Both the position numbers and the translations under genes were made by a program. From IMG/VR virus record IMGVR_UViG_3300020154_000003, positions 186,001-250,000 of that record: a DNA stretch of 64,000 nt, one strand, 5' to 3'. Numbering within the stretch: the first letter of the stretch is position 1; each line of letters starts with the position of its first letter. The notes below the pieces were generated by a model, which saw only the letters and a list, made by a program, of their open reading frames with translations, was not told the DNA's origin and ran no database searches. Of this stretch, positions 4,145 through 63,819 are shown in pieces.

Positions 4145-4206
4145 TGGTGAAGGGAGAGGGAATCGAACCCCCGATCAAAAACTCTAACCAACTGAGTTAT
4201 CCCTTC
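4145..4206 (-). ncRNA. 62-nt tRNA-like RNA lacking the entire anticodon arm
   Basis: GAAGGGA/TCCCTTC acceptor stem + ACCA, D arm ACTC-AGTTGGTTA-GAGT, 8-nt linker TTTTGATC, T arm GGGGG-TTCGATT-CCCTC. Confidence 0.8.
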
Positions 4207-4212
4207 ATTTTT

Positions 4213-4371
4213 TCAATTTTCCTTGAATGGCTTAACTTTACCAGTTTCGCTATCCACTACGAACTTTCGTTTCATAAACTCTCGGTTAAGATTGGCCTTA
4301 GGGTCATTCCTTAACACCATCGCTTTCTGAGATAGAGACAGTTCTGTGTAATATTTTATAATTTCAGCCAT
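4213..4371 (-). CDS. 52-aa hypothetical protein, not in the ORF track
   Basis: MAEIIKYYTELSLSQKAMVLRND...KPFKEN*; fills the gap upstream of the tRNA-like element. Confidence 0.55.
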   Translation of the reverse strand: MAEIIKYYTELSLSQKAMVLRNDPKANLNREFMKRKFVVDSETGKVKPFKEN

Positions 4372-4619
4372 ATGTTTATTCATTAACAATCAACATTGCA
4401 GGGGAATTGGCAGGTGCCACCCATAGTACAATTTTGACTACGACCAGTTGGGCTTGAAGGATCACCCCAAAACCCTCTTTTCACCAATTGTATAGAGACT
4501 TGAGCCTCAGTAGCCTTTCTGGAGAGTACTCGATATTTATCGTTGTACTTATCGGCTCTCCTTTTGGCCCTTGCTTTACGTTTTGCTATTTTTTCTGCTC
4601 TGGTCATGATTTACAGTAT

Positions 4620-4644
4620 TATACGCAAAATACTATAAATTGTT
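4620..4644 (-). promoter_or_regulatory. Phage promoter AAC-N16-CGTATA
   Basis: Exact spacing; just upstream of ORF 4383..4607. Confidence 0.75.
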
Positions 4645-5330
4645 ATTTTTCAACATGTTCATTCAAAATCTTCAGCAGTTCATCCAGATGTGCTTCTGTC
4701 TCGCGTGTGCCAAACGATGATCTTCTTTTGTGGATGTTGTCAAGGATTTCCATTACTCCCATCCCTCCACGTTCGTTCAGTCTTTTAAGGGTTTGCCCGT
4801 GGTTTTTTTGTGCCCATTCCTCATTCAATAGAGACATCGGGACAGATTTCGGACAGTTCTTATGAAACCTTCGAGACTCAGAATGAATTTCCATTGTGTC
4901 CATATCCTTAATTAAGTTTTACCTCTTCGCATGGTCAGAGAAAACAACTCATCGGTTGCTTTCGTTTGATTGTAAAAGCCACCGTATTTTGTTAAGGTAG
5001 AATAGATGTCGTTCCAAATCCTTTGATCCTTCAAAGTCTTTTTCTTACGTGGATCGTATATAAGTTTTGCCATGAGTTTAATCGCATTCACCTTGACAAA
5101 CTGATTTCAAATACCCACAGCTTGAGCATCGATTTTCTGATTCCCACGCATCCTGCTTGGCTTGTTCACGGTCATTCAATACCCATTCCTCTTTATCTTC
5201 GTCCCATACCATTCCTTCGTAAAAGCCTCCGGGGCCATTACTGGTAAAGAATTCTCTGTTAGTCATCTCACCTCTGGAACGATGATGGTCATCCCATTTG
5301 GTGTCATTTTCATTGTAACCCGGATATTTT

Positions 5331-5618
5331 TTAGCCATGTTGTAAATTTAGATAGGTCATAATTGTTTCATTATATTGTTTAAATTCAGTGTTTAACGCA
5401 CGTATAAGAACACCTCTGTTTCCGTTTTGTTCAAACTCCCATGCTTCATCTGCAGGGATGACAAATTTGTTTGTGTGTGTATCTAATATATCCCAAATTT
5501 GCTCGGTACGTCTATTCTTTTTGTTTCTTATTACGTATCGAGACTGTGTTTTATATCGTCTCAATCCTTTACGTATCAATCTCTGCTTACGATACTCATC
5601 AACAATATCTTCATACAT
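5331..5618 (-). CDS. Paralog family B small protein
   Basis: RYVIR...WDILDTHTNKF...LNTEFKQYNETIMTYL. Confidence 0.7.
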   Translation of the reverse strand: MYEDIVDEYRKQRLIRKGLRRYKTQSRYVIRNKKNRRTEQIWDILDTHTNKFVIPADEAWEFEQNGNRGVLIRALNTEFKQYNETIMTYLNLQHG

Positions 5619-6059
5619 AACTTACATTTGGATGTAGTGCCTCCTGAGAACTTTTTCGTAAGCAACTAACAATTCTTCGTCATTAAACGTATTGAAATCC
5701 AACGTCTGAATCGACTTACCGAAGATTAGAAACTCACGCCACCGCATGAGACCTTTATCAAAACCATTATGTTCTTTTTTAATGTCTTCGATTCGTTGAA
5801 GAATAAGTTGTCTCATATTATTATGGTTTAAAGGTTTTGCAGTTCACAAACATAAATGTCGGATTCAAATAAAGGTCTGAAATCTCTTTTGAATAAATCG
5901 GCAGGTCTATATGGTTTACCATTTACAGGAGCGTCAGGCAATTTCTTGTATTCCTCATCGGTTAAAAGACAAACATTTTCAAATCTAGCTGGCATAGACA
6001 CATTTCTTCCGATAGACTCTTTTTTTCTCCACGTATGGCCTTTATAACTAAACATTTTA

Positions 6060-6365
6060 TTACGCCCTCACCAAAAAATCATACAAATTTATTTCATATG
6101 CAAAATGCTCGTTGCTCAGTGCAACATATAAGTTCTCCAATTCACCACGCTTATGATGTACCCAACCATCTACTTCATGTAAGAGAAATTTATTTTGAAA
6201 ATTATCCCATATGTCATACCATTTCTTTTCATCAGCATATGTGGTATCGTAAAATTTTCTCTCGGTATATTTATAGCGTCTCAGTTCTTGAGGCATGTAC
6301 TGACAAGTTATGACGATTGCCCTAACCTCTTCCAACTTCTCTAATACCTTTTCATAATCATTCAT
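6060..6365 (-). CDS. Paralog family B small protein
   Basis: RYKY...YDIWDNFQNKF...LSNEHFAYEINLYDFL. Confidence 0.7.
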   Translation of the reverse strand: MNDYEKVLEKLEEVRAIVITCQYMPQELRRYKYTERKFYDTTYADEKKWYDIWDNFQNKFLLHEVDGWVHHKRGELENLYVALSNEHFAYEINLYDFLVRA

Positions 6366-6591
6366 CTTTCAGATAATCATGTATTGTTTTTTCGTAATGA
6401 TAGTGTCCATCATTAAGAAACGACATCAAACCACTTATCTTTGATCTATGTCGTTCATGTCCTTCTTCAGCACTCAACACAAATTCTTTTTTAAATCGAT
6501 CCCATACGTCATCCCAATGAATTATACAATCATGTTCGTCATATCCTTGCCTTGACATCCAGACATACCTAACGTATTCAAAGTGGGGCAT
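6358..6591 (-). CDS. Paralog family B small protein
   Basis: RYVW...DDVWDRFKKEF...LNDGHYHYEKTIHDYL. Confidence 0.7.
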   Translation of the reverse strand: MPHFEYVRYVWMSRQGYDEHDCIIHWDDVWDRFKKEFVLSAEEGHERHRSKISGLMSFLNDGHYHYEKTIHDYLKDE

Positions 6592-6801
6592 TCCTAACGG
6601 CTTCCTGCCACTCCATTTCCAAATCCAACACAGTCTCAGCTTTCAAATCTCCACCAACGCTAGAGACCAAACCCATATGGTTTTCATAACCCATAAACCA
6701 CGTTGGAGTTAGGTCACTAACTTGTACTCGCACATAAGAATATTTGCTACCCTCACCTATTGGTTTGAATATCCAATACTGTGTTGTCTTTATAATGTGT
6801 T

Positions 6802-7035
6802 TCATTTTCTTAAGAAATAATAAACGTCAAGATTGTAATACGTATACTCCATCAGGTTGTACTTGGCTGATAGTTGAATTTCTCTGCTTCGATAAATGGG
6901 TCTGTCTTCGAGAATATCCTTAGCAAATCTTTGCCATAACGATAATTGAGTTTTCCTTTTTAAGGATGGACAAGCATCGAAAAATGTTTTGATGTCATCA
7001 AGCACGTCATCGACTGATTGATTTGTGTGTATCAT
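6802..7035 (-). CDS. Hypothetical protein carrying the C-terminal tag
   Basis: Ends EYTYYNLDVYYFLRK. Confidence 0.55.
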   Translation of the reverse strand: MIHTNQSVDDVLDDIKTFFDACPSLKRKTQLSLWQRFAKDILEDRPIYRSREIQLSAKYNLMEYTYYNLDVYYFLRK

Positions 7036-7856
7036 ATTCCAAGCTTTCTCGCAACAACCACATCAACATAATATATGACGGAAGCATAACTATCATCGGA
7101 GCGACCCTTTTCAAGTAGACCTTGCTTAACAAAGAAGTTTGCTACTCTAATTTCATCACTACTCATCAACTTCCTCAGTACAGGCCCATCTGCAAACCTA
7201 CTTAAAAATTCTAATCCTGTCTTGGAAAGGGGAGGAAGATTATCGAATCGACTAGCATGTTGGATGCACAGCCTAACCTTAGCTTCCTCAACAGCTTCAT
7301 CGAATGTGGTGTGCTCTTTTACGTCAAACATTGCTGGCAGACTACCGTGTCCTATTTCGTGGTATTCGTACAGTCCTTCCTCATTCTTTACTATTCTCCC
7401 ACGATAGGTGTCTTTGAAAAACACCTTAGCGATTTTAGGGTCGTTTAGGTCTTTTATCGGCACCTTTACTTTAACAAAATTTTCTGTATACCACATATTC
7501 ATTATGCGTTTTGTCCTATCAGATTTTCGTAAAGAATCATATACCTTCTACGAATAGAAAAGTTCAACTTGTATTTCTTTTCTACCGCAAGCATTTTCTT
7601 AAAATCTGCCAACGTTATCCAGTAGTTGTTATTGCAGAAATTACCACAAAATCCTGCGATCTCATCTTTCACCTCAATGGGTAAATCTTTTCTACCCGAT
7701 GCCTGTTTCAAGCAGCCAACTAAGGTTTGAACATCAGCAGGATAGACTCTATGGTAGCATAGGATGGCGATGTCTCTCAACTTTTTTAGGGATGCTGGTT
7801 TGATTTCCACTTTAGAATATTGGAGATCACGCAGATGTGGTTCCAGTTCGCTTGCC

Positions 7857-8468
7857 TTAACGATTTTTCTTATAACTATCATTATTAACTACGTTTTCTT
7901 CAAACCAACGATTGATTGTATTCTGTCCTAAGATATTACCAATTTGCCATTCTTTCGCAAATTCGACTGCGATAACTTTCATTTCATCAAGCGAGTATAA
8001 TCTTGGCAAACGAATGATTACATGCCCATTCATTAGTTCAACTCCCCAACAACCAACAGCACCGTAACATTCGATCAATAATTTATCACCTTTTCTCACA
8101 TTACCATCTGCGATCATTTGTAAATCTTTGAATGAAAAGTGATCCGGGAGTGCAAGAACCTTAAACCATCCTAAGGACTTCGCTTCTTCAGGAGGAAAGT
8201 TATTATCACATCTTTCAAGACTGCCGTTATTGTAATAAATCCAATCACCTATTTCAATCGGTTCTTTCTCCGAAATGAGTAACGGTTTTAAATATTTACC
8301 AATTCCCTTAATACGACCGTTGGAGGAAGTGAAGGCAACCCTCAAGGTCGAATTAGTTGCGTACCACAATTTAGCTTCTTCTGGTTGACATTCGATTAAA
8401 ACAAGTTTACCCTCTGCCATTGGGCAATTGGGTAGATCAGGTAAGGTAATGGTATGTTTTACTTTCAT
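7857..8468 (-). CDS. Paralog family A hypothetical phage protein
   Basis: EGKLVLIE...KPLLISEKEPIEIGDW...KVLALPDHFS..DLQMI.DG. Confidence 0.8.
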   Translation of the reverse strand: MKVKHTITLPDLPNCPMAEGKLVLIECQPEEAKLWYATNSTLRVAFTSSNGRIKGIGKYLKPLLISEKEPIEIGDWIYYNNGSLERCDNNFPPEEAKSLGWFKVLALPDHFSFKDLQMIADGNVRKGDKLLIECYGAVGCWGVELMNGHVIIRLPRLYSLDEMKVIAVEFAKEWQIGNILGQNTINRWFEENVVNNDSYKKNR

Positions 8469-8722
8469 GCTTGGGCTGCTAGTTGTGCAAATAACCTCTT
8501 GTCTTCGATTCCATAGCCTGTATTATCTCCCAAAAGTTCCAATGCATCTTTACGCATGGTGTTTACATCCGTTGTTTTGAGGACTTCATCGATGTCTTCA
8601 GGAGTCACATAGTCCCGGCCATTAGCAATGGCGATCTTTACAAGGGAATTATCCTTGTGCGCTTCCTGAAGGTGCTTATGATAATCTTCAATAACTGACA
8701 TGATGACTGGTTTTTAGGTTAT

Positions 8723-8747
8723 TATACGTAAAGATAGTGGATTTGTT
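8723..8747 (-). promoter_or_regulatory. Phage promoter AAC-N16-CGTATA
   Basis: Exact spacing; upstream of ORF 8465..8701. Confidence 0.75.
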
Positions 8748-8784
8748 TTAATATGAAAAACTATTACAAACCATGAATAATGCA

Positions 8785-8792
8785 TATATTTG
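8785..8792 (+). promoter_or_regulatory. Bacteroidota primary-sigma -7 element TATATTTG
   Basis: Matches TAnnTTTG, 6 nt before ATG 8799 of a lone plus-strand gene. Confidence 0.5.
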
Positions 8793-8798
8793 TACCTT

Positions 8799-9269
8799 AT
8801 GGATGAAAAACAGGATTTCGACCTAACTTCTGAAGATGTTCGAGAGGCCAGACGCATGGTCGATGAGGCTAGTGCCATCATAACAATTTATCGTCCCAAT
8901 GGTGGCGATATGAGTATTACCGTGGGCAAACCCGCTAAAAAAGTATTGGTACGCTATTTTCACCTGCTGACAGGGATAGAGTACACACGGGTTAAGGAAT
9001 CCTTAATTAACTATGGTACTAACGATTATTATGATGGGAATGAGATCGATGGTATTAAGAAGATATTTTTTAAAAATACGAAAACTAGATTTTATCACAC
9101 AATAAACGATATTAATCTCTATTACAAGAAAATCATATGTTTATCAAGATATGAATTTTTGGTTTACACCTTAAGTGAGGATGAAAACAGAGAACGTGAA
9201 ATGAAGAAAAAGTTTCGGTTGGATTATGTCGCTACTATGAGGGAATTCATTGCTCAACCAAAAAGTTAG
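8799..9269 (+). CDS. Hypothetical protein carrying the C-terminal tag (start moved to ATG 8799)
   Basis: Ends FRLDYVATMREFIAQPKS; the TTG start at 8790 overlaps the promoter. Confidence 0.6.
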   Translation: MDEKQDFDLTSEDVREARRMVDEASAIITIYRPNGGDMSITVGKPAKKVLVRYFHLLTGIEYTRVKESLINYGTNDYYDGNEIDGIKKIFFKNTKTRFYHTINDINLYYKKIICLSRYEFLVYTLSEDENREREMKKKFRLDYVATMREFIAQPKS

Positions 9270-9462
9270 AAATCTCTAACAGATAATACATATGATCAGC
9301 GACCAGCACCCTACTTTCAAGCGGATAATGAGTTTCAGAGATTAATTTGATGTGACTTCTGAATATAGTGTTTAATCGCAATTCAGTAATCACTTCATAA
9401 TTATTACTTAGAAGTTCGAAAACATTATGTGCTATGTTATTATGACAAGTAGGGATTGGCAT
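9247..9462 (-). CDS. Hypothetical protein carrying the C-terminal tag
   Basis: Ends DHMYYLLEISNFLVEQ. Confidence 0.55.
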   Translation of the reverse strand: MPIPTCHNNIAHNVFELLSNNYEVITELRLNTIFRSHIKLISETHYPLESRVLVADHMYYLLEISNFLVEQ

Positions 9463-10097
9463 CAGTTGACAGGATACAAAATCAATGCCCGTGGCTTGGC
9501 CTTAATTTCTTTCCATTCTTCGTCATCCATGCCTGCATCATACGCACTCCATTTGGTGTCATATACTTCACCAGAATAGGTAGTATCAGGAACGTAAACG
9601 GCATCAGGGTCAACGTCAGCCAACGGTGAGTAACCATTACCTTCAGAATCTTTTTGAAGGATGACTTCCATATCATCAGGCAAGTCTTTGATGGCTGCTT
9701 TTAAATCTTTAACGGTCATATTATCCCAAGTAATTTACACGGTACAAAGAGAACAATCAATCCAACAAGTAAGAGTATGCATTGAATGGTAATGTTTTTT
9801 GGTTGTTTGAATATTGGTTGAAGTCCCATGCCTGCTGAACAACCCAATAGAAGTCCTCCAATCAAAAGTAGTATGTAAGCGATGATTTCTGTCATTTGTC
9901 TTCGATGTCAATCCAACCAACCACTGCTCCCAAGCCAGTAAATACTGCAACCGTGTAGATCACTTCTGCTTTTCCAACTGGCTCCCAATTGCAAGTTACT
10001 GCTTTAACGATACACCTTATTTCACCAATGATGGCGAGTATAACGATAAGTATAATAATCAATCTCATTTTATTTTGGGGGGGGGTTAAATTTAAAA

Positions 10098-12578: not shown

Positions 12579-12581
12579 GAT

Positions 12582-14213: not shown

Positions 14214-14525
14214 AAATCTTGTTGCCGTTGGTTTTTATGTTTCTGTATAGTCTCAACTAATTTCTTTATCTTATGATCAACATTTAAAGCTTCTGCTATC
14301 TTGTGGGAAACATTCGCATCTATTGCAATTTGTGCATCCTCCAAGTTGTCCCAAAAAGTAGTGAAATCATCATGAACCTTAAACGTTTTATCGCTCATGG
14401 ATTCCCATTTCGGTGATCCTATTGATCTTATGTCCCGGAAGAAATTAATACATTCCTGCTGACGTTTGGTCAGATCATCAACGATAGATATTAAACTTTC
14501 AGTTGTCATTTTAACACGTTTAAAG

Positions 14526-14682
14526 TGGCGAAGGGAGGGACTCGAACCCTCATTCTGTAGATCGGTCTTGCTCGTCTACAGCGTTGGTCTCAGCCTTGGG
14601 CAAGAAATCGTAAGCCTTTACCTCACGACCTATCCATATTGGCCTGATCCACAACTGCGTTTACCAATTTCGCCACCTTGCC
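14526..14682 (-). ncRNA. 157-nt tRNA-like RNA (class II, Leu-type body) with the anticodon arm replaced by an extended structured domain
   Basis: GGCAAGG/CCTT(C)GCC-A acceptor, D arm GCG-AAATTGGTAAA-CGC, ~70-nt insert closed by GTTG/CAAC, variable arm CTGTAGA/TCTACAG, T arm GAGGG-TTCGAGT-CCCTC. Confidence 0.75.
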
Positions 14683-25820: not shown

Positions 25821-26702
25821 ATAACATAGTTAAACAATACAACTATGATTAACGAAATGGAAGCAGTACAGAATTCAATATACGGATGGCCAATCATCAT
25901 AATGGTGCTCATCGCATTCGTACTTAATTTCATCATCGCCCGGAAACTCACGATAGTTCTGATCAATCAGGGCTTTCTGAATCATAAGAGCACAAACCCG
26001 AAGGACATCGATACGTTTGAGAAGTGCGTTCTTGCTTGGTTTATACCCATAGTTGGTCTTGCTTCAATTTTCATGCTTTTGTTAACCCATTGTGTTATCC
26101 GCACTTTCAAGAGCACTCGTAAGAGACTATTCCTTAAACACGTCTAAGCATGGACACACCCGAAAAAGCCTTTAAACTCAAATCTATCTTGGACTTAGGT
26201 AGCATGACCAAGGAAGAATTAATAACCTACATTGACAGCCTTCACAACACCGTCCTGAATTATCAGTTGGTTATTGATCAGGTGGTCGCAAAAAATGTGA
26301 ATGTGAAAAGATGAGTGCAGACCAATTAACAATGTTCAGTATGGTGGCCATCATGGTCATGCTGTACATCTGCGAGAAGTTCTACGAAATCAAGCTAGAC
26401 CCTGAATTTCCTCCCGCATTGATAAAGATCAAGAATACGATCTTGAATTTTATCATAATTTTCATCACCTTTGTTCTTATATCCAAAGCACTATGAAACG
26501 GAAACTCGATAAAAGCGAAAGAACAGCCATATTGATTGCTGTTCTTTCTGCATTAGTATTGATCTCCATCATGGTGTTTACATAAATAGTACTGGCAGCG
26601 TCCACGATCTCACCAGACGCATTTTAAGCCGTTTCGCACACCAGTACTAGCAGAACAATGTTCCCTCGCATATCATCGAATTAGCACATTGTAATGCATT
26701 GT

Positions 26703-26872
26703 GGATGATGACAGGACTCGAACCTGCATCGGAAGTCGATTGCCTCTATCCCGAACCTAAGTGTTTTTATTACCTTACTAAATTAAGGGAGCATTGAATG
26801 CGATCAGCTTAATCGAGAAGGATTGTGGTGTCAGTCCACGGGTAGCGGATAACCCATTTCGCCACATCATCC
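26703..26872 (-). ncRNA. 170-nt tRNA-like RNA with the anticodon loop replaced by a four-hairpin domain
   Basis: GGATGATG/CATCATCC acceptor, D arm GCG-AAATGGGTTATC-CGC, CCCG/CGGG stem enclosing ~85 nt, variable arm GAGG/CTTC, T arm GCAGG-TTCGAGT-CCTGT. Confidence 0.75.
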
Positions 26873-47356: not shown

Positions 47357-48373
47357 TTACTTTTTGCTGTCATAATGTTTGTTAATAATTTTGAAACTAC
47401 CTCTGCTATGCTTCACTACAACACCTTCAAACGGTTTTCCGTTTATTTTATTGATGCCAATTGAATATTTTTCAACAAGTTCACGGGTGAGAATGACATT
47501 TTCTTCGATCATGTCAGCAATCGGTAAGCCAAGTTCTTTAGCCACATTTACAAAGTAGTATTTATGACCTTTTTCAGCATATTCACGTTCATCCACCAAA
47601 TATGTGGCAAACATGGCCCAACCTTTTGGAAGCTTTGAATGCGGATTATTCTCATTAGCCTGAATACCTTCACCATAGCTTTCGCCCCGGATGCATAAAG
47701 ATACATTATTCTCTTTGCAAAATGCAACAAGTTTGTTCTTTAAATCATATCTTTCAATATGAGCGGTGTAATTATTCGAGAATATTTCATGTAATTCTAA
47801 AGAACGGCCCAATACTGAAAATTTATCATCCGTCAATTGGTACAAGTATGACGATGACTGACCATCCACTTTTAATTGAATATCAACAAGTTCACCATAT
47901 GGTAATTTATTCACCATATTCTCGAAACGCTCTTCATCGGTTTTAGGAACACCATATGGCAGTCCACCCTTCGCATTAAGTTCTTGAGGTACTGGTGGTT
48001 CGTAATGGGTAACGCCCAACAAACCAGAAACATCGTCACCTATATTGAATTTAGGTAAGTGTTCTCTCACATTCTCAGGAAGAATATCAAAAGGCACAAT
48101 AATACCTTCAGACCACATGTTTCTTAGCTTAACGGCTTTGATGCGCTTTGGCGAATATTTTCTATAATCTTCAGTCCACGGTTCAACAGGCAACAACGAG
48201 TCAGGTCTAATGTAGACTACTGTATCGCCTTCTTTATATAAACCTAGTTGAGTGATGCATTGAAAACCTAGAATTTTTACTAACTCAAGTCTGTCTGCCT
48301 CAGGGTGTTTGGTAATCGAATCGATTTTTTCGATTGTAGCATCTTTATTTTTGCTACCTTCTTGTATTTGCAT
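47357..48373 (-). CDS. RNA ligase, DRB0094 family (Rnl2-like)
   Basis: N-terminal HPEADRLE OB-like domain, KTDEER, motif I KVDG, RGE, EGVV, FKII. Confidence 0.85.
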   Translation of the reverse strand: MQIQEGSKNKDATIEKIDSITKHPEADRLELVKILGFQCITQLGLYKEGDTVVYIRPDSLLPVEPWTEDYRKYSPKRIKAVKLRNMWSEGIIVPFDILPENVREHLPKFNIGDDVSGLLGVTHYEPPVPQELNAKGGLPYGVPKTDEERFENMVNKLPYGELVDIQLKVDGQSSSYLYQLTDDKFSVLGRSLELHEIFSNNYTAHIERYDLKNKLVAFCKENNVSLCIRGESYGEGIQANENNPHSKLPKGWAMFATYLVDEREYAEKGHKYYFVNVAKELGLPIADMIEENVILTRELVEKYSIGINKINGKPFEGVVVKHSRGSFKIINKHYDSKK

Positions 48374-55869: not shown

Positions 55870-57097
55870 ACGACATTCTGTTTGAGTTCGTCAGAACCAT
55901 TTAAAATATTGTCTATATCCACAAAAAGGTTTGATGAAACTTGAATCAAACCAAGTACGGTGAACATATTGTTTTCTAACAGATACGGCATCGTAGTTTC
56001 CTTTTGATTTGTCTCTGGATTTGGCATGACCTTACCTTCTTTGGTGGCTACCATAAAAGTGACAGTTTTCTTAGTTTTATCAATAGAACTAAAGAAAATA
56101 TCAAAATTATTATTAGGTAATGTCAGTTTATAGTAATGCTTCATGTTCTGTCAATGCTTTTTTAAATTCTTTGTCATTTCCATTCCAGAATTCTCTCATG
56201 AATTCAGGTGAAAATAATCTTAGGAAAACGGCCAGTATCGCAGCACCTGAGTCTACCCCATAGATGTCGATAGCCGCATTCAACTCCAATTGATTTTCTT
56301 TGCTTAAATATCTTCTAGTATCTTTAGATGCTCTGTATAGTTTGTAACTATTCCACATATTTCTTAATAAGTTTTAGCTGTTCCAGTAATCCGTGGTCGC
56401 TTTCTTTTTAAGAGTGGTTTCTCATAATTAGCAATTTCGGATAATTCATTGAATTTCTTAGCAGCAGATTCAATCAATCTATTTTTTTCGGTTTCATCAC
56501 AGGATTCAGGAAGCACGATAATGACATCTGAATCACTATTTTTAATGGCATTACCTAAACCATTCAATGAAACAATATTAATCGATGGCTTCATTTTCCT
56601 TTTTACTCCAGTACTTTAGGAAGCCTTTCAACATACCCATCCTTACAAGGAAGAATAGCCCATACTCCCATGTTGCTGCACCGATCAAGAAAGTGAGTGC
56701 ATCGACCAATTGTTCGTTCAATAAGAACTTAATAAAAATCAACACGCCAATTATAAAAATTGGTACTCTGAATAATAATTCAGTTAGTTTGAAGTTTTTC
56801 ATTTTTATTCGCTCGGTTTTTACCTAGATGATACCCATCACAAAAAAGACATTTATAGTTACTGAACCACACACCATGCTTTTCAGACATTTTTTTAGCA
56901 GCCTTTGTCGCACTAGCCTTCGTATTATACATCACTTTGGCCTGACCATTTTCCCTATAGTGGCTCCGCTTATGGAACAACCCCAAAACATGTCCTTTCA
57001 AGAGATTTCTTACGAATCTCGTAAATGGGCCTTGATCCTTTAGTGCCAATATGATGTTCTTAACTTTCATCCGATGCCAAGATATGAATAATTTACA

Positions 57098-58522
57098 TTA
57101 TTCACAAAATATTTCTTTGAACCCCAAAATAGTTTCATCCAAAATCACATCTTTTTCATAAATGGGACGTTTTAACTTCAAACGTTCGAGCGTTCTGCAT
57201 CGAGACAGTGCAACATATGTTTGGCCGCTCGTAAAGGCACCACCAGCACCCATATCAATGAGTACATCATCATAAGTCTGACCTTGACTTTTGTGTATTG
57301 TTATCGCCCATGCGAGACGTATCGGATACTGTTCAAATGAACCAACAATATACTTTTCAAGCTTTTCAGTACCGGGAATTGGGTCGCCATTCTCGTCCTT
57401 CTGAACTATCTTTCGATACTTAATTTTGTCCCATTTCTCCTTTTCCAGCGTGAGCATTTTTTCTCTGCACTCAACAGTAATCGAATTCTTATCAAGCTTT
57501 CTAACGATAGCAACGTCACCATTCACGAATTTGCGCATACTATCATTCTTGATCATTATCAGTTTAGCCCCTTCCTTAAGGACAAGAATGCGTTCAGTTG
57601 GATACGACTTCTCATCAAAATCACCAGTTATTCTTCCCTCATATGAATAAGGCATAGTATCTAACTTATTCAAAAAGAAGTCATTTATTTCTTTGGCTTT
57701 TGAATTTGTTGAACAAAGCACAATAGTCCCATTTTCTCGCAATCCCTTTACATTGGTCACTAACCGCTTATTCAGTTTGGCTAATGTCGCTCGAAGGTTT
57801 TTTTTCTCTCTGATATTATTAAGAATACTGATGAATTCAGGATCGGTTTGCCTGTGAATTTTTTCAAGGCTAATTAAGGGAAGGCGCAGTCCTTTAAATA
57901 CATTAGCATGGAAGAAATATGGACTTTGGTAGTAATTGTTATACAGTGCTGTTAATTCAGTTTCCAGTACTGGAGGAAGTTGATGCAGGTCACCGATAAA
58001 GATCATTTGAACGCCTCCAAACGGTGCGTCATTATTACGATGTATCTGCAAGGATTTGTCGATGGCATCAATTAAGTCTGCACGACACATTGATATTTCA
58101 TCTATAACGATGGTGTTGACAGTTCTTAGAATAGGGAGTAATAATTCTTGTACTCTAATCCTATTCAAACTAATAAAGCCGACAGGGAAATGAAAAAAGG
58201 AGTGAATCGTTTGACCTTCAACATTGATTGCTGCAAGTCCTGTGAAAGACAATACTGCAACATTTTTCTGCGTGATTGATCTGAAATACTTCAGCAATGT
58301 GGACTTACCAGTTCCTGCCTTACCTGTGATAAAGGTCGATTGATTATTATGTTCAAGAATATTAACGGCTCGAACAAACTCTTCAGTTTTTTTTATCTTG
58401 ATGATGTCCTTACCAAGGACTAAGGAAATTTCTTCGTCAATAGCAGCATCTTCAGAAAAGAAGTTATTTATTTCTGCCAAGTAAGCTTTCTTCTCCTGCT
58501 CCTTATTTCCTAATTTGCTCAT
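57098..58522 (-). CDS. PIF1/RecD-like SF1B DNA helicase
   Basis: TGKAGTGKS, DEISM, GDLHQLPPV, HRQ, AWAITIHKSQGQT, YVALSR. Confidence 0.9.
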   Translation of the reverse strand: MSKLGNKEQEKKAYLAEINNFFSEDAAIDEEISLVLGKDIIKIKKTEEFVRAVNILEHNNQSTFITGKAGTGKSTLLKYFRSITQKNVAVLSFTGLAAINVEGQTIHSFFHFPVGFISLNRIRVQELLLPILRTVNTIVIDEISMCRADLIDAIDKSLQIHRNNDAPFGGVQMIFIGDLHQLPPVLETELTALYNNYYQSPYFFHANVFKGLRLPLISLEKIHRQTDPEFISILNNIREKKNLRATLAKLNKRLVTNVKGLRENGTIVLCSTNSKAKEINDFFLNKLDTMPYSYEGRITGDFDEKSYPTERILVLKEGAKLIMIKNDSMRKFVNGDVAIVRKLDKNSITVECREKMLTLEKEKWDKIKYRKIVQKDENGDPIPGTEKLEKYIVGSFEQYPIRLAWAITIHKSQGQTYDDVLIDMGAGGAFTSGQTYVALSRCRTLERLKLKRPIYEKDVILDETILGFKEIFCE

Positions 58523-59442
58523 TTCTTGTTTTCCAATTTTTTATTAATGGATGTTAAGAATAGAATGATCAGAGATAGACAAATAATAAGAACTATTTCA
58601 ATCCCCAAGAAGTGGTTAAGTAGTACTAATGCCAATACGAATAATATATATGACCAGTTCATGTTTTATTGTTTATAGTCATCATCCCCTTCGACAGCCT
58701 TGGGCCAAAGGTTTTCAGATATTTCCAAGATTTTATCAGATTGGTCTATAAGATTTTTAGCCCAATTGATAAATGTTTCTTTGCTTATGCCACTAATATC
58801 GCCATCGTGATTGACAATATACTCACCAATCCTTCTCGTGGTTGATGCACTTTGATTCAACCTAAACGCTTTGTCATATATCTCTCGTTGACTATACTCA
58901 ACTGTTACTCTTTTCTTTGCCATCTTGGATTGAATTAACTATTGTGTGTGCTTCCAGTAAATGCTGATCTATATCTTTGAGATTTTCTTGACATACACGG
59001 AATTCTTTCACAAAAATCTCATTAAAAGCTTCATCCTCAAAGGGCATATTGAATGACTCGTGGTGCGACAACATTGAAACCAAATTCATGAAAGGAGATA
59101 ATTTATTTCTTAACCTTTCAATAGGATCGTTTTCTGTTGGAGTTAAAATCTCTTGAAGAACAGGTTTAAGTTCAGCAAATATTTTGGCACCAATTTGATC
59201 TCCTTCGTCTGGCGTAATTACCTTAGAATTCCTCCACAAGGCATTAGATATTATTTCAATCCAATACTCATCATCTCTAATTAGTTGCGCTCTACTTATC
59301 ATTCCACTTGTTATTTTTCCTTCGATTCTTATTTCTGTTCTCTAATTTAAGTTTTGTCATTTTCAACTGATATTCCCAAAACTTAACACCATATTCATCT
59401 TTTTTGATTTGTGCTTGACGGATGTATTCGGGATATGTTACT

Positions 59443-60084
59443 TCAATTTTCTTTTTTAGATTCTTCGAGTCCTGCATTGAATGGATTTCCTAATTTTGTT
59501 ACAATAATTTGCATTTGTTCCATAGTCAAATCTCTGAAACTCCATTCACCCAATTCATTGGAGAATGGCTTGATGCGAGTCAACATCTCATTCATTGAGA
59601 TACTATAGGCTTTCGCTAACTTATCACATGAATTATTCATACACAGAGGATCAAGTTTCATCAGTCCCATATGTAATGCTGCTTCGAGTGCTTGGTGTCG
59701 TGTTGGAAATTCACCATTGTCGCCATACCAACCAGTACCATCTGTAATGTGGGTAGGGACTTTCTCACGACCATTCTCAGTGTCTATTTCCGTATATTTC
59801 CATTCTTCCTTAGGAAGATACCACAACACCTGCCAATTCCAATTAATACCATCAACATACATTTCAGGCATCAATGGTAGAAACATCCCCTTACCTTCGA
59901 GAAAGGCTATTGCATCATCCTGAGTGGGTCTAAATAAAACCTCATCGTCCGTTTCATCACCAACCCAATCATTGGATTCCGTAACCGTACCGTCAGTACG
60001 AATTAAGAAAGCATTTTCTGTAGGTTTATCGAAACCACGCTTTTGTAATAATTTAGCTACTTCTAACCCTACTAATTTGCTCAT
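59443..60084 (-). CDS. Hypothetical phage protein, paralog of 37631..38104
   Basis: LV..EVAKLL...GF...RPTQ..AI.FL...ALEAAL. Confidence 0.55.
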   Translation of the reverse strand: MSKLVGLEVAKLLQKRGFDKPTENAFLIRTDGTVTESNDWVGDETDDEVLFRPTQDDAIAFLEGKGMFLPLMPEMYVDGINWNWQVLWYLPKEEWKYTEIDTENGREKVPTHITDGTGWYGDNGEFPTRHQALEAALHMGLMKLDPLCMNNSCDKLAKAYSISMNEMLTRIKPFSNELGEWSFRDLTMEQMQIIVTKLGNPFNAGLEESKKEN

Positions 60085-60457
60085 AATGTTTATTTAATAT
60101 TCTTTGTAAATGTAGCGTTTCTCCTTCAACAATTTCACCATCCTTCGAAATTTGTTTGATTAAATTTACGGGATGATTTTCCAACGTGTTTAAAATCGAT
60201 AAATTATAGAATTCATCATCACCTAAACCAACTGGAAATATTTTTACGCCATGTATGTCATCCTTCAAAACAAGATCACCATCAAAATCAAGAAAACAGG
60301 ATTCATAGACCAGTCCGTCATATAGTACTGGTTTGGTTGAATCTTGGAATTGAACAATTTCAATATCCACCCTAGGCTCGATGATTTGTGGTTTTAAATT
60401 TTTCTTGAATTTGCTGACTATTTCTTTTAATAAAGCTGACACGACTTTCACGGCGAT

Positions 60458-60667
60458 TTATGTTTCACTTACAAAATTAATTACTTCAGATATATAAGCT
60501 TGATAGAGTTCCAGACGAACAATATAAAGATGTTCCATCCTCAATGACTCTTTCAATCTTTTGTATTTTGGAACATTCATACAATCATCACATTCCAACC
60601 CATCAGCAACAATTCCAAATTCGCTAGGACGTTTCCCACAAATGAAACATTCACAATTTATTTCCAC
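60458..60667 (-). CDS. Small CxxC/CxxC Zn-finger protein carrying the C-terminal tag
   Basis: CFIC...CDDC; ends LYQAYISEVINFVSET. Confidence 0.55.
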   Translation of the reverse strand: MEINCECFICGKRPSEFGIVADGLECDDCMNVPKYKRLKESLRMEHLYIVRLELYQAYISEVINFVSET

Positions 60668-62008
60668 AGAACGTGAGCATTTAACATTTTCATGACTTCA
60701 TCATAAGGCATGTTGAGTATGCTGTTAAAGTACGCCTGATCACTCAAATCCACATCCAACTCCAGAAAATTCATCACGTCATTCAAATGTTCATTTCTAT
60801 CCCACTTCTTAAAATCGATTTTAAGCAATTGAGCCTCGTATGCTGCTCTTTTCGCAATAAACATCTCTTTTATTTCTTCATTCATCTCTACACTTCAAAT
60901 CCCTTTATGAAAATCACCACTCCCACAAATATAAGTGAAAAATAGAACCTATGCTTGAACATAGGTTTGTTACGGTGAAGATAGATTTTTGGCCTAAATT
61001 TGAATTTAGGTGCCAGATAAATTCGAATCGACATCTCTTAGAGTTTACCGATACAGTCCGGGCAATTCAAGTAACCGTCCAGTACATCGACTGGATTCTG
61101 GTTGCAACATGCACACATAATCAAGATCGGTTGTTGAACTTTTGCCTTTGGAGAAACCTTGTTATCCTTGGGCTTCATGGTTTGAGTCTTCATTTTAATA
61201 TTGCTTTAGCACTATCAAGTTTTTCAATGGCTAGTTTTTCGAGTTCTTCCCTTGACATACTCTTAATTTTTTCAAGATTCGGGTCAAGTTCCATATTCAA
61301 ATCAGCAGTAGCTTTAAGAATTTCAGCACGAAGGAATTTTGTAATGTCAGCAGGGAGTGCCTTTGCATTTGCATCGGTAGTGACAAACTCTCCAACAGCA
61401 CCGCCTGCGATGATCAAAAGCATATCTTTTTTTGCGGGAGTTGCAATGTAAGCAAGCCAGAAAAATATAAACATAGGAGTGGAGTACCACAGCCATTTAC
61501 GCATAATTCTGAGATTTTCTTTATCTTCGTCAGTTTCATCTTTAGAAGTAATAGTACCATCGTAGGTCGTTTTCGTGTTTGCAGAAAATTTATAGCAAAC
61601 AAAAATAAGGAACGATACAGCAAAAATGATAGTTGTAAGAACGCACATCCATCCGAAGAAGGTGCTCAGGTTATCGACAATTGAAAACAAGTAGAAAATT
61701 AGATACCAATTCATAATGATTTTTATTTAGATTTTTTTCTTTTTTTAGGTTGATTATAAGGTTGCTTCAAAAACGACACTAATTCGGCATGATTCAGTTT
61801 TCCTGAACTGATGTCGAAATAGATTTTTCGCAATGTGTCAACTCTTGGGTTATTGATGTTCACTACATCATCAAGCACTTTATCCAGAACTTTCATCGCA
61901 TCCACCTTAACGGAGCGAGAAACCTTCCTAGACACAGGTTTTTGTGCGATAATTTCCTCGTGTTTCTGTGGTTTTGCGGGTATGTTGAATAAGTTAAACA
62001 TATTCAAA

Positions 62009-62033
62009 TATACGCAAACCAGAGGAAAATGTT
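62009..62033 (-). promoter_or_regulatory. Phage promoter AAC-N16-CGTATA
   Basis: Exact spacing; upstream of ORF 61723. Confidence 0.75.
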
Positions 62034-62289
62034 ACAAAAAAGGCTACTTTTTTATCATCCTGAATTAAGGATGGAGGTAGTAAACAAGGGTGTTAAAGAC
62101 AAGAAATGCAGCACCGAATGCTACTAGTATTGAAACCACTATTGAAATTTTTAACGCCCTTGCCCTTGCTTTATTTTTTGCGATCTCCTTCCTCACGTTT
62201 CTTTTCAATAAATTGGTATAATAAGATGAACAGGATAAGAGTGACATAAAAGCTAATGAATAGGTTTATAAACATTCTTATAAATAGTA

Positions 62290-63597
62290 AAAGTTTTAGG
62301 CAAGTGCATCGACCATTTGGGTTCGCAGCAATGGTCTTGCCTAAAACATAACTGAGAGTTTCTCAGTTTTTCTTTAAATAGTAACCCACGCCTTAATAGT
62401 ATAGGTTCGGTTCTTACTCTGTTCGAGCACTGAGTTTTTCAGAACCTACGACTGTTTGTACATCTGCCAGTACGACCCACAGACAAATTACTGGCATCAT
62501 GGTATTCCAATGGCTCTCACGTTCGCCAATCCTCTCTTCCCTCTCTTTTGCTTGGCCATCATGACGATGGTTTTCATTCTGACAAGGATCAAGGTCGCTA
62601 CAATACTTACGGGTTTGTAGGGCATATTGCAAGCCCCTTGCAACACGACCGAGTTTTTTTAGAGATAGATAGAAATGCTTACTTATGTGTTCAAGTTCGG
62701 CATCCCCGTGTGGCAGCTTTGCAATCCGTACTTCACGATGAATGAGACCGTGGAGCAAAGTTTTCTCTTTAAGTCGCTAACCATGCGACAGCCAGTCTTA
62801 TTTTCAATGTCACGATCTAAAGGATGTTTAACAGTCGATCTTAATGGGTATTTCAAGGTTCCTGACTTCATCCACTACTACGAACCCTTTTTCGTAACCA
62901 TGACATTCAAAAAAACAGCAACTACACAGAAGGTTTTTTAATGTTGTTTCACTCAATCAGCAGCTATACAACTGTGTAGTCCCTTACGTTATCCCCCTTA
63001 TCATCAGTGTGGCCACACGGATTTACGGTTGGTTCCCATATCAGTTTACCGTTCAAAAATCATTATGTTGTGATCAGCCATCGAGTACTTTTATCCACCA
63101 ACGCCACTCTATGTATTGGCGCACAACTTTGGCTGGCTATGGTCACCATCTTAAAATCACAACATTAAATAACATGTGGTCAGGGATTATGGCATCTCGC
63201 TTGCAGTGCCAAACTTGCGGATAATCCTCCCCTCCACAATGAGATAATAAATTGACGAATGATCGAGATTTATATAGCCGCGAAGTAGAACAACGCTCTC
63301 TTTCTGTGCTGCGCATTTATCGCCAATTTAAAATAAAAAATTAAGTCTCATCACTACAGTTGTAATGAGATTGTCGTAACTTCCTCTTACTTTCTTCAGA
63401 GCGAGATTTAATATGATCAGAGCGTACTCGCGAAGGAGCGACACATTTAAGCGTTCTAAGACCAGTACCGAAGTACCGACCCAATGAGTAATCACATTAC
63501 GAAACCAACTTTACCAACTTACTGTACGCATACACAGGTGTCATTACTCTGTTTACCAATGTGTGTCGGTGAGCCTCTGCAGCGAGACCCTTGGCTT
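62290..63597 (-). ncRNA. Candidate giant (~1.3 kb) structured ncRNA in a GOLLD/ROOL-like context
   Basis: No credible ORF, raised GC, more than ten 7-12 bp nested helices; downstream of a promoter, tRNA-like element and boxA; ends in a 12-bp stem + TTTT. Confidence 0.7.
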
Positions 63598-63608
63598 AAT
63601 TTCTATTT

Positions 63609-63620
63609 TTTCAAAGAACA
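63609..63620 (-). promoter_or_regulatory. rrn-type boxA antitermination element
   Basis: TGTTCTTTGAAA on the minus strand, matching the GTTCTTTGAAA boxA of rRNA leaders. Confidence 0.55.
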
Positions 63621-63729
63621 ATGAGGTGCAGGAAGGTCGGTTATGCCTCCTTTTTCCAATACGTACATTTAAACGTTCATCCTGCAAACCTTGCAGTAAC
63701 CACACCTCCAACCCTATAGGAGTTGTTTG

Positions 63730-63819
63730 TAGGGGTGAGAGGATTCGAACCTCCACTCTTCGGGGCTTCAGTAATGCAACCACAGCCCCGATGTTTTATC
63801 CAGTTAAACTACCTCCCCT
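63730..63819 (-). ncRNA. 90-nt tRNA-like RNA with an extended anticodon arm
   Basis: AGGGGAGG/CACCCCT-A acceptor (imperfect), D arm GTTT-AACTGGATA-AAAC, 8-bp stem TCGGGGCT/AGCCCCGA capped by 16 nt, T arm GGAGG-TTCGAAT-CCTCT. Confidence 0.75.

What the first reader, a model, noticed from the sequence alone, without database searches (positions are those of the whole stretch)
4145..63819. All four tRNA-shaped genes have a re-engineered anticodon arm: a possible natural tRNA-scaffold RNA family
Seen: elements at 4145-4206, 14526-14682, 26703-26872 and 63730-63819 keep paired acceptor stems, D arms with GG, and GTTCGA T loops. The anticodon arm is, in order, absent, replaced by a ~70-nt domain, replaced by a ~95-nt four-hairpin domain, or lengthened. 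The inserts are themselves base-paired, which random pseudogene decay would not produce. Established: RNase P, 3'-processing nucleases and CCA-adding enzyme recognise the acceptor/T/D elbow rather than the anticodon, and engineered tRNA scaffolds exploit this by placing cargo RNA in the anticodon stem. Inference: the phage uses tRNA bodies to excise and stabilise cargo sRNAs, to punctuate polycistronic mRNA, or as decoys for tRNA-targeting defences such as anticodon nucleases.
Basis: partly seen in the sequence, partly recalled or inferred. Interest (0 to 1): 0.9.

Follow-up and report, generated by a model that had tools for sequence, protein, structure and literature searches.

The report
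Phage tRNA-shaped RNAs without anticodons
Four genes in this giant phage fold like transfer RNAs at their ends, but the decoding arm is deleted, stretched or joined by extra RNA; they are strongly conserved and resemble many unannotated elements in other phage contigs, and their job is still unknown.

Summary
All four elements lie on the minus strand at the stated coordinates. E1 (4145-4206) and E4 (63730-63818) pass Rfam's tRNA threshold with the anticodon arm missing or over-long. E2 and E3 keep a type-II (Leu-like) acceptor, D arm and T arm around about 75 to 115 extra bases. ARAGORN calls none of them a tRNA.

They are not decaying pseudogenes. A related phage differs at 51% of four-fold degenerate sites, yet E1 differs at 0 of 60 bases, E2 at 5 of 157, E3 at about 13 of 172 and E4 at 0 of 89.

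They are probably not intron-bearing tRNAs. E1 has no anticodon, and a test across 21 related sequence clusters found no more canonical loops than chance predicts.

A pattern scan of viral contigs found 36 further loci (19 sequence clusters) with the same Leu-type frame around unrelated structured middles. It also found several other armless tRNA-like elements. Many of both kinds sit inside phage tRNA arrays.

My best reading is that these are tRNA-framed, non-decoding stable RNAs cut out by tRNA-processing enzymes. Function is untested. The closest precedents are T4 RNA C and RNA D, whose roles are also unknown, and mascRNA or plant t-elements.

The parts
4145..4206 (-). E1: anticodon-armless tRNA-like gene. 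It has a 7-bp acceptor stem, a D arm, an 8-nt linker, a T arm and A73, followed here by CCA.
   Evidence: Rfam tRNA 45.4 bits, with 18 model positions replaced by 3 nt. It is 60/60 identical to the relative L151:14266-14324, while both flanks are only ~50% identical. It lies 6 nt after the upstream stop codon and 8 nt before the next ATG.
14526..14682 (-). E2: Leu-type (type II) tRNA frame with the anticodon arm turned into a long irregular arm.
   Evidence: Sequence read directly. It matches the Leu-frame search pattern (L114). It shows 5 changes in 157 nt against the relative, with diverged flanks. The acceptor 3' strand carries a bulged C.
14583..14655 (-). E2 extended arm (73 nt), closed by GUUG/CAAC. 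It stands where the anticodon arm would be and contains a 7-bp hairpin with a 7-nt loop.
   Evidence: MFE fold z = -2.2. The single substitution against the relative (C to T) keeps a G-U pair.
14555..14581 (-). E2 long variable arm (7-bp stem).
   Evidence: Folds. Identical in the relative.
26703..26872 (-). E3: type-II tRNA frame with about 115 nt between the D and T arms. The acceptor is 7/7 paired, with a possible extra G-1:C73 pair.
   Evidence: Sequence read directly. It matches the Leu-frame search pattern (L110). About 92% identical to the relative, with the conservation boundary exactly at the 5' end. The T-stem G-U becomes G-C in the relative.
26825..26839 (-). E3 hairpin just after the D arm: 4-5-bp stem with 7-nt loop ACUGACA. 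It is anticodon-arm-like but lacks U33.
   Evidence: RNAalifold structure. In the relative, a C to U change adds a U-A pair at the base of the stem.
26729..26823 (-). E3 extra domain (~95 nt): a branched hairpin, an A-rich linker, and a 6-bp stem next to the T arm.
   Evidence: A G to A change in the relative turns a G-U into an A-U in the 6-bp stem. Folding energy is not better than shuffles.
63730..63818 (-). E4: class-I tRNA-like gene with a 7-bp anticodon stem, an 18-nt loop, and two mismatches in the acceptor stem.
   Evidence: Rfam tRNA 44.3 bits. Identical in relative L157 and absent from relative L158.
63833..63861 (-). Sigma-70-like promoter (TGAACA, 17 nt, TATAAT). It overlaps an inverted repeat and ends 14 nt upstream of E4.
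   Evidence: Promoter scan, 10 of 12 matches. Conserved in L157 and L158.
63620..63729 (-). About 110 nt that travels with E4. Together with E4 and a few bases upstream of it, it forms the ~205-nt segment missing from relative L158.
   Evidence: Alignment A4; coordinates.

Best explanation
The four loci are genuine, selectively maintained genes for tRNA-derived RNAs that cannot decode.

What each keeps: the acceptor/T-arm half and a D arm with the elbow nucleotides. By established knowledge this is the part that RNase P, the 3'-end nucleases (RNase Z or exonucleases) and CCA-adding enzyme recognise.

What differs in the anticodon branch:
- E1: deleted.
- E2: rebuilt as a 73-nt irregular arm.
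- E3: accompanied by a ~95-nt extra domain.
- E4: a 7-bp stem with an 18-nt loop.

Inferred mechanism: E1-E3 are transcribed with the neighbouring minus-strand genes, and E4 from its own promoter. Host tRNA-processing enzymes cut them out, and they persist as stable RNAs of about 60-175 nt. The tRNA frame is the excision and stability module. The variable middle is the lineage-specific working part, and E1 is the empty frame.

Shown: tRNA-like anatomy, inability to decode, strong constraint on frame and insert, and wide occurrence in phage contigs and tRNA arrays.

Inferred: processing, stability, and that the middle is the effector. The molecular target is unknown.
For: Anatomy:
-.

Selection:
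- 4-fold degenerate sites in 10 flanking orthologous genes differ at 331 of 653 (51%) between the window phage and the Logan relative.
- Against that, E1 differs at 0/60, E2 at 5/157 (1 change in the 73-nt arm), E3 at ~13/172 and E4 at 0/89.
- Conservation starts exactly at nucleotide 1 of the acceptor in E1, E2 and E3.

Elements of the same design elsewhere:
- The pattern TGGCGAAATNGGT-N(100-130)-GGTTCGARTCC found 110 stretches in IMG/VR.
- Of 43 listed hits without an internal T loop, 37 have 7/7 acceptor pairing. That pairing was not part of the pattern; chance is about 0.1% per hit.
- The hits fall into 21 sequence clusters with unrelated middles.
- Across them there are 16 distinct acceptor strands with 147/147 cells paired, and T-stem pairs 49-51/63-65 are 63/63 paired. 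A73 occurs in 16 of 21 and C74 in 17 of 21.
- One cluster shows compensatory changes inside its middle domain.
- Many members lie within phage tRNA arrays on the same strand.

Armless elements like E1:
- They occur in other phage contigs, several inside tRNA arrays, with different acceptor sequences that stay paired.

Precedent:
- T4 RNA C has a T arm and a weak acceptor stem around large hairpins.
Against: - There are no expression, end-mapping or binding data.
- E3's middle is no more stable than shuffled sequence.
- E2's acceptor stem is bulged, and its 3' strand and discriminator are the least conserved part. This might impair tRNA-type processing.
- E4's acceptor has two mismatches, and E4 is absent from one close relative, so it is dispensable.
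- A more distant relative (65% identity at the 330-aa syntenic protein) has no T-loop element at the E1 and E2 positions, so the elements are young.
- No antisense target for the inserts was found in the window.
- The Leu-frame set was collected with one narrow pattern, so its true breadth and homogeneity are unknown.
Confidence: 0.45

Rival explanations
1. The working part is the tRNA frame itself, not the insert. The RNAs act as tRNA-body mimics. They would bind, occupy or be modified by factors that read the acceptor end and elbow without needing an anticodon. Candidates are host toxins or defence enzymes that act on tRNA 3' ends, synthetases such as LeuRS or HisRS, CCA-adding enzyme, and EF-Tu. 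Some may be aminoacylated and used off the ribosome.
For: - E1 has no cargo, yet all 60 positions are identical to the relative, D loop and linker included.
- Armless elements recur in other phages.
- A73 and C74 are kept in most Leu-frame elements. By established knowledge, bacterial LeuRS does not read the anticodon.
- E3 has G-1 opposite C73, the main HisRS identity element, seen directly.
- The phage encodes several tRNA-end enzymes: a T4 Rnl1-type RNA ligase 0.7 kb upstream of E4, a second RNA ligase at 47357-48373, and a Pth2-type peptidyl-tRNA hydrolase about 4 kb beyond the window start.
Against: - E2's acceptor 3' strand and discriminator are its least conserved part, and they pair imperfectly in both phages.
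- E4's acceptor has two mismatches.
- The inserts of E2 and E3 are as conserved as the frames. A pure frame function would not require that.
- No defence target is identified.
Confidence: 0.2
2. They are only processing signals ('punctuation'). RNase P and RNase Z cleavage at the tRNA-like fold separates neighbouring cistrons and sets mRNA ends, as in mitochondrial transcripts and plant t-elements. The excised RNA itself has no role.
For: - E1, E2 and E3 sit in gaps of 0-16 nt between same-strand ORFs. E1 is 6 nt after a stop codon and 8 nt before an ATG. E2 is 10 nt after a stop and 16 nt before an ATG.
- E1 is the minimal fold such enzymes need.
Against: - E4 follows its own promoter and is followed by non-coding sequence.
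- E3 is the last element of its transcription unit.
- Similar elements in other phages lie in pure tRNA arrays.
- A cleavage signal would not need 75-115 conserved extra bases.
Confidence: 0.15
3. E2, E3 and E4 are true tRNA genes interrupted by short introns that are removed, for example by cleavage and phage RNA ligase, to give decoding tRNAs.
For: - In E2 the 7 nt before the 3' strand of the closing stem read CUGAGAC, a canonical loop with Leu anticodon GAG that fits the Leu-like body. In E4 they read CUGAAGC.
- The phage has two RNA ligases.
Against: - E1 has no anticodon at all.
- Across 21 clusters, only 3 of about 91 candidate closing stems are preceded by a canonical loop. About 6 are expected by chance, and the three read Leu, Phe and Ser.
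- ARAGORN's intron mode gives mutually inconsistent isotypes.
- No group I intron or self-cleaving ribozyme was found by Rfam, and the inserts are far shorter than group I introns.
- In the L039 cluster the 'insert' appears to pair with the variable region, so it looks like part of the fold; this is read by eye from alignment A5.
Confidence: 0.07
4. They are decaying remnants of tRNA genes with deletions or insertions and no function.
For: - Acceptor stems are imperfect in E2 and E4.
- E4 is absent from one close relative.
- The elements are absent from a more distant relative.
Against: - Divergence is 0-7.5% in the elements against 51% at neutral sites and ~50% in adjacent spacers.
- The few substitutions fall at tRNA-variable positions or keep pairs.
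Confidence: 0.03

Closest known systems
Bacteriophage T4 RNA C and RNA D (species 1 and 2 stable RNAs, genes rnaC and rnaD)
   Same: They are phage-encoded and lie in the tRNA gene cluster on the same strand. RNA C ends in a canonical T arm and a short acceptor-like pairing that encloses large hairpins. Their function is still unknown (PMC3014915, PMC9697503).
   Different: - No sequence similarity is evident by eye; it was not formally tested.
- T4 RNA C has no D arm and only a weak acceptor stem.
- The elements here keep a full D arm and elbow, and in E2 and E3 a Leu-type frame.
- The window elements are scattered among protein genes rather than in a tRNA cluster.
mascRNA (from MALAT1) and plant mitochondrial t-elements
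   Same: These are tRNA-like folds without decoding function. RNase P and RNase Z cut them, which defines the ends of neighbouring transcripts (PMC1920247 for t-elements; mascRNA from general knowledge). E1 matches in size and in its position between cistrons.
   Different: They are eukaryotic or organellar, and no homology is implied. Rfam's mascRNA model matches only E2's T arm, at chance level. E2 and E3 carry large conserved inserts that those elements lack.
Engineered tRNA scaffolds for recombinant RNA expression (e.g. PMC3753655)
   Same: The design is the same: cargo placed in the anticodon branch of a tRNA, so that the cell processes and stabilises it.
   Different: Those are artificial. 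Here the design is natural and conserved, and it is mostly built on a type-II Leu-like frame. In some elements (E3, L111) the extra RNA seems to sit in the variable region instead.
tmRNA and bacterial Y RNA (YrlA) tRNA-like domains
   Same: These are non-decoding RNAs that mimic the acceptor/T/D part of tRNA.
   Different: - tmRNA has a tag ORF, pseudoknots and G3:U70. ARAGORN finds none, and Rfam matches only the T arm.
- YrlA has its 5' and 3' ends in the Ro-binding stem that replaces the anticodon stem, which is the opposite topology. There is no Rfam hit.
Irregular or pseudo-tRNAs: Bacillus cereus tRNA-Other, and allo-tRNA-like polycistrons
   Same: These are tRNA-shaped genes that do not serve normal translation, some in polycistrons and possibly regulatory (PMC3399842, PMC7609411, PMC5389517).
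   Different: Those keep a normal-sized anticodon arm. None is described with the arm deleted or replaced by a 70-115-nt domain.

Membership tests
Canonical decoding tRNA (Rfam RF00005) | T arm with a 5-bp stem and a TΨC-type 7-nt loop, plus a D arm with G18 G19 | tested here: met
   All four have GGTTCGA-type T arms and D loops with GG. E1 also keeps U8, A14, G15/C48, A21 and A58, read directly.
Canonical decoding tRNA (Rfam RF00005) | 7-bp acceptor stem joining the 5' and 3' ends, followed by a discriminator base | tested here: inconclusive
   The stem is perfect in E1 and E3. E2 has a bulged C, plus a mismatch in its relative. E4 has two mismatches.
Canonical decoding tRNA (Rfam RF00005) | Anticodon arm: 5-bp stem and 7-nt loop with U33 and a purine at position 37 | tested here: not met
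   - E1: arm absent.
- E2: 73-nt arm.
- E3: a 7-nt loop (ACUGACA) without U33, plus a ~95-nt extra domain.
- E4: 7-bp stem with an 18-nt loop.
ARAGORN finds 0 genes.
Intron-containing tRNA (group I, or protein-spliced) | A recognisable intron core, or removal of one segment that leaves a canonical anticodon arm with a cognate anticodon | tested here: not met
   No Intron_gpI or ribozyme hit. The test across 21 clusters gives chance-level canonical loops. ARAGORN -i isotypes are inconsistent.
tmRNA | tRNA-like domain plus an internal tag reading frame and pseudoknots | tested here: not met
   ARAGORN finds no tmRNA. Rfam's tmRNA model matches only the 17-nt T arm, at 9 bits.
T4 RNA C / RNA D-type phage stable RNAs | Non-decoding RNA with a tRNA-like 3' domain, encoded with phage tRNAs and processed with them | tested here: inconclusive
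   The architecture is comparable, and many similar elements in other contigs lie in tRNA arrays. There is no curated model or defining sequence to test against. Processing is not testable here.
mascRNA / t-element-type processing signals | Cleavage by RNase P at the 5' end and by RNase Z at the 3' end | not testable with these tools
   This needs in vitro cleavage or end mapping. Only the fold and the intercistronic position are seen.
Bacterial Y RNA (YrlA) | RNA ends in a Ro-binding helix that replaces the anticodon stem, with the acceptor-like stem closed by a loop | tested here: not met
   Here the ends are at the acceptor stem. No Rfam match.

The most novel reading that the evidence does not exclude
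Phages widely encode a modular class of 'tRNA-framed' RNAs. In this reading, a conserved tRNA top half and elbow hijacks the host tRNA-processing and stabilising machinery. A fast-evolving middle domain, or the bare frame alone, then acts on host or rival-phage factors, for example as an inhibitor or bait for tRNA-directed immunity or translation control. That would be a natural counterpart of the engineered tRNA scaffold, and a functional explanation for the 50-year-old puzzle of T4 RNA C and RNA D.
Probability: 0.3. Interest if true: 0.85.

Novelty: new variant of a known kind. Interest (0 to 1): 0.72.

Why it matters
Phage tRNA genes are now seen as weapons against tRNA-cleaving defences. 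Standard tRNA finders skip the elements described here (ARAGORN gave 0 calls), so they go unannotated.

This work shows three things:
- The elements are strongly conserved.
- Elements of the same design occur in many phage contigs and tRNA arrays.
- They are built on one repeated plan, a conserved frame around a variable middle.

That defines a concrete, testable class of phage non-coding RNA. If the frame does drive processing and stability, these are natural RNA expression cassettes whose cargoes may reveal new host targets. They may also explain the T4 RNA C and RNA D puzzle. At the least, phage annotation and tRNA-array analyses should count them.

Tried and rejected
- Pseudogene decay: rejected by comparing the elements with neutral sites.
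- Simple intron model: ARAGORN intron mode gave inconsistent isotypes. My own closing-stem and loop test over 21 clusters was at chance. E2's CUGAGAC loop is therefore not significant on its own.
- Known RNA families: Rfam at gathering and E-value thresholds gave only tRNA or T-arm matches on the window, the E2 and E3 regions, 10 related loci and the E4 region. There was no group I intron, ribozyme, tmRNA, YrlA, GOLLD or ROOL.
- Close relatives in cultured phages: none by megablast or blastn. The only hit was an unannotated human faecal contig for the L039 cluster.
- Isotype of origin for E1 and E4: blastn gives only generic D-arm and T-arm matches to many isotypes.
- Synteny in distant relatives: IMG/VR relatives of the 503-aa protein (29-57% identity; L002-L015) have no tRNA-like element at the E3-syntenic position. 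One of them (L006) carries tRNA genes elsewhere, including one with a 24-nt stretch in place of 13 model positions. The relative at 65% identity to the 330-aa protein (L154-L156) has none at the E1 and E2 positions.
- Stop-codon recoding as an explanation for the ORF-free 1.7 kb after E4: rejected, because all three stop codons occur in all frames.
- Antisense or paralogous matches of the elements within the window: none.
- Function of neighbouring ORFs: 10 flanking proteins have no Pfam or PHROG match.
- Metagenome scan for E1-like cores: only the source contig and four unrelated soil sequences.

Full report
**Source and context.** The window is bases 186001-250000 of a 366-kb viral contig, IMGVR_UViG_3300020154_000003 (also Ga0196965_1000004). 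GC content is about 37%. Genes are mostly small and on the minus strand. They include a Dda-like helicase, an HNH-helicase fusion, an RNA ligase, a NUMOD homing-endonuclease-like protein and a pentapeptide-repeat protein. No cultured phage matches at the DNA level. The helicase is at most 41% identical to anything in the phage collection.

**Check of the observation.**
- ARAGORN finds no tRNA or tmRNA in the window.
- Rfam's tRNA model passes its gathering score twice, both on the minus strand. E1 (4148-4206) scores 45.4 bits, with the 18 positions of the anticodon arm replaced by 3 nt. E4 (63730-63818) scores 44.3 bits, with 22 nt where the 7-nt loop should be and two acceptor mismatches.
- E2 (14526-14682) and E3 (26703-26872) give only T-arm matches. 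Read directly, both have a bacterial type-II (Leu-like) frame: a 7-nt acceptor strand, U8, the D arm GGCGAAAU-GGU..CGC, later a GGUUCGAGUCC T arm, and then the complementary acceptor strand.
- A scan for G+C-rich T arms finds only these four in 64 kb.
- The coordinates and the description are therefore right, with four caveats.
  - E2's acceptor has a bulged C, and E4's has two mismatches.
  - E3 can be read as keeping a 4-5-bp stem with a 7-nt loop (ACUGACA, no U33) next to the D arm, with the ~95 extra bases in the variable region.
  - E2's arm folds moderately better than shuffles (z = -2.2), but E3's middle does not (z = -0.3).
  - E1's encoded CCA is not conserved.

**Are the elements maintained by selection?** Searches with three flanking proteins found a related phage in Logan assemblies of SRA runs SRR306424xx. 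The neighbouring proteins are 51-92% identical. In ten orthologous flanking genes, four-fold degenerate sites differ at 331 of 653 positions, which is 51%.
- E1 is identical at 60 of 60 positions, from acceptor nucleotide 1 to A73-C74. The spacers on both sides are only about half identical.
- E2 has 5 changes in 157 nt. Four lie in the tRNA frame: position 20, a T-loop base, the variable-arm/T junction and the acceptor 3' strand. One lies in the 73-nt arm, a C to U change that keeps a G-U pair. The flanks are rearranged.
- E3 is about 92% identical, and conservation begins exactly at its first base. A T-stem G-U becomes G-C, and two other changes improve predicted pairs.
- E4 is identical in one relative contig (L157). 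A ~205-nt segment holding E4 and the following ~110 nt is missing from another contig (L158).
- Decay is therefore excluded. The inserts are as constrained as the frames, and E4 is an optional module.

**Elements of the same design elsewhere.** I searched IMG/VR for the Leu-type D loop followed 100-130 nt later by the T loop. That spacing is too long for a normal tRNA. The scan gave 110 stretches, of which 80 were listed.
- About half of the listed hits are simply a tRNA-Leu next to another tRNA.
- Of the 43 listed hits without an internal T loop, 37 have a perfectly paired 7-bp acceptor stem, which the pattern did not ask for.
- Counting E2 as well, these fall into 21 sequence clusters. E2 and E3 are two of them.
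- Elements are 143-172 nt long to the discriminator.
- The middles are unrelated in sequence and predicted fold.
- Across 21 elements (two members of one cluster; E2 left out) there are 16 different acceptor strands with 147 of 147 cells paired. The three T-stem pairs outside the pattern are 63 of 63 paired. A73 occurs in 16 of 21 and C74 in 17 of 21.
- One cluster from human-gut contigs shows compensatory changes in the acceptor stem and in three helices of its middle domain.
- Many members lie inside phage tRNA arrays on the same strand, sometimes 2-3 nt from the next tRNA.
- In one-per-species bacterial genomes the same pattern mostly hits adjacent tRNAs. Only 5 of the first 100 matches are true long-insert elements: Bacteroides, Chryseobacterium, a Bacteroidia MAG, Parabeggiatoa and a Chloroflexia MAG. 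One is nearly identical to a viral-contig member, so a prophage is likely.
- A second pattern, with D loop and T loop only 4-15 nt apart, recovered E1 and several other armless tRNA-like elements in unrelated viral contigs. Some sit inside tRNA arrays, and one lies 36 nt downstream of a long-insert element.
- Six of these armless elements have quite different acceptor sequences that remain 97% paired. This set was partly chosen for pairing, so the count is indicative only.

**Are they intron-bearing tRNAs?**
- In E2 and E4, the 7 nt before the 3' strand of the closing stem look like anticodon loops (CUGAGAC and CUGAAGC). The first would fit a Leu body.
- E1 has no anticodon at all.
- Across the 21 clusters I tested every 5-nt segment that could close a stem with the bases after the D arm. 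Only 3 of about 91 are preceded by a canonical loop, where about 6 are expected by chance. They read Leu, Phe and Ser.
- ARAGORN's intron mode returns a scatter of isotypes.
- Rfam finds no group I intron or small ribozyme.
- I therefore treat splicing as unlikely, about 7%.

**Genomic setting.**
- E1 lies 6 nt after a stop codon and 8 nt before the next ATG.
- E2 lies 10 nt after a stop codon and 16 nt before an ATG.
- E3 follows a stop codon by 9 nt, and by 0 nt in the relative. It ends the minus-strand unit.
- E4 lies 14 nt downstream of a good sigma-70-like promoter, TGAACA-17-TATAAT. It heads a 1.7-kb ORF-free stretch.
- Flanking proteins have no known domains.
- About 81 kb of the contig, which is the window plus roughly 8-9 kb on each side, holds no canonical tRNA.
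- The contig does encode a T4 Rnl1-type RNA ligase 0.7 kb upstream of E4, a second RNA ligase inside the window, and a Pth2-type peptidyl-tRNA hydrolase. The phage therefore invests in tRNA-end biochemistry.

**Most likely mechanism.** It is established that RNase P, RNase Z and 3' exonucleases, and CCA-adding enzyme recognise the acceptor/T-arm helix and the D/T elbow, not the anticodon. All four elements keep exactly those parts.
- I infer that they are cut out of their transcripts like tRNAs and persist as stable RNAs.
- I infer that the frame is the processing and stability module and that the conserved middle (E2, E3, E4's loop) is the working part. Confidence is about 0.45.
- The main rival is that the frame itself is the effector, as a tRNA-body mimic that may be aminoacylated. 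Points in favour are the perfect conservation of cargo-less E1, A73/C74 in the Leu-frame set, and G-1:C73 in E3. The point against is that E2's acceptor end is its least conserved part. Confidence is about 0.2.
- Pure mRNA punctuation fits E1 and E2. It does not fit E4, E3 or the array-borne elements in other phages. Confidence is about 0.15.

**Comparison with known systems.**
- The nearest precedent is T4 RNA C and RNA D, stable RNAs from the T4 tRNA cluster with unknown roles (PMC3014915, PMC9697503). RNA C ends in a canonical T arm and a weak acceptor pairing around big hairpins.
- mascRNA and plant t-elements work like E1 would (PMC1920247).
- Engineered tRNA scaffolds share the design (PMC3753655).
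- tmRNA and YrlA mimic tRNA but fail the membership tests on tag ORF and topology.
- I found no paper describing phage tRNA-like genes with the anticodon branch deleted or replaced (searches; review PMC7609411). Absence from this library is not proof of novelty.

**Verdict.** The scaffold interpretation is partly supported in anatomy, selection and breadth, and untested in function. I rate it a new variant of a known kind (tRNA-like non-coding RNAs), with interest 0.72.

Noticed in passing
window 62007-63730 (minus strand), downstream of E4: About 1.7 kb has no ORF longer than ~120 codons in any frame, with all three stop codons present. Yet it is 85-88% identical to three relative contigs, in blocks of 92-98% separated by short variable patches. 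A ~240-nt core (62750-62990) is 97-98% identical in all four genomes, against 51% divergence at neutral sites. It has its own promoter and no Rfam match. It looks like one or several unknown structured RNAs.
   Followed up: partly
window 26320-26702 (minus strand), downstream of E3: About 380 nt of non-coding sequence is 86-96% identical to the relative. It lies between E3 and the convergent plus-strand genes. No terminator-like site was found.
   Followed up: partly
window 63620-63823; L158:4128-4144: E4 and the ~110 nt after it form a ~205-nt indel. The segment is present and identical in L157 and absent in L158, with no flanking direct repeat seen. Parts of E4's 18-nt loop (UGUGGUU, UUACUG) recur about 40 nt downstream of E4.
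   Followed up: partly
L287:6159-7238 and L288:14764-15189 (same contig, outside the window); window 47357-48373: The phage encodes a T4 Rnl1-type RNA ligase next to rIIA/rIIB-like genes just upstream of E4. It also encodes a second RNA ligase (PF09414), a Pth2-type peptidyl-tRNA hydrolase and a Macro-domain protein. No canonical tRNA was found in about 81 kb.
   Followed up: partly
L039:7277-7441, L057:874-1038, L088:4510-4678, L056:4603-4772: In a human-gut cluster of long-insert elements, a 4-bp hairpin has a 7-nt anticodon-like loop. The loop reads CUUAAAA in some members (anticodon UAA, Leu) and CUUUAAA or UUUUAAA in others (anticodon UUA, ochre-suppressor-like). The stem shows one compensatory change.
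   Followed up: no
L021, L022, L027, L028, L032, L034, L036 (viral contigs of ~30 kb): A conserved element contains TGGTTAGAG, a short linker and a T arm. Mostly it lies a few hundred bases from the end of the fetched locus, and in L027 it sits just after three tRNAs. It may be an att-site or a truncated-tRNA feature.
   Followed up: no
L176, L208, L234 (CPR and Thiotrichales genome contigs): Here a 5' fragment of a tRNA-Leu gene is followed, after 60-80 nt, by a complete tRNA-Leu with the same acceptor. These look like integration-site duplications and are false positives of the long-insert pattern.
   Followed up: no
window-wide, e.g. 4137-4148 and 14507-14525: Start codons near the elements are preceded by A-rich sequence without a Shine-Dalgarno motif. 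One homologue of a window protein is filed under a Richelia (cyanobacterial) MAG, and other relatives come from Bacteroidota-type phages. The host is unresolved.
   Followed up: no
L113:3014-3270 and L042:77-205, 721-879: Other phage contigs carry two non-canonical tRNA-like elements close together: a long-insert element plus an armless one (L113), or two long-insert elements (L042). This mirrors the mix seen in the window.
   Followed up: partly
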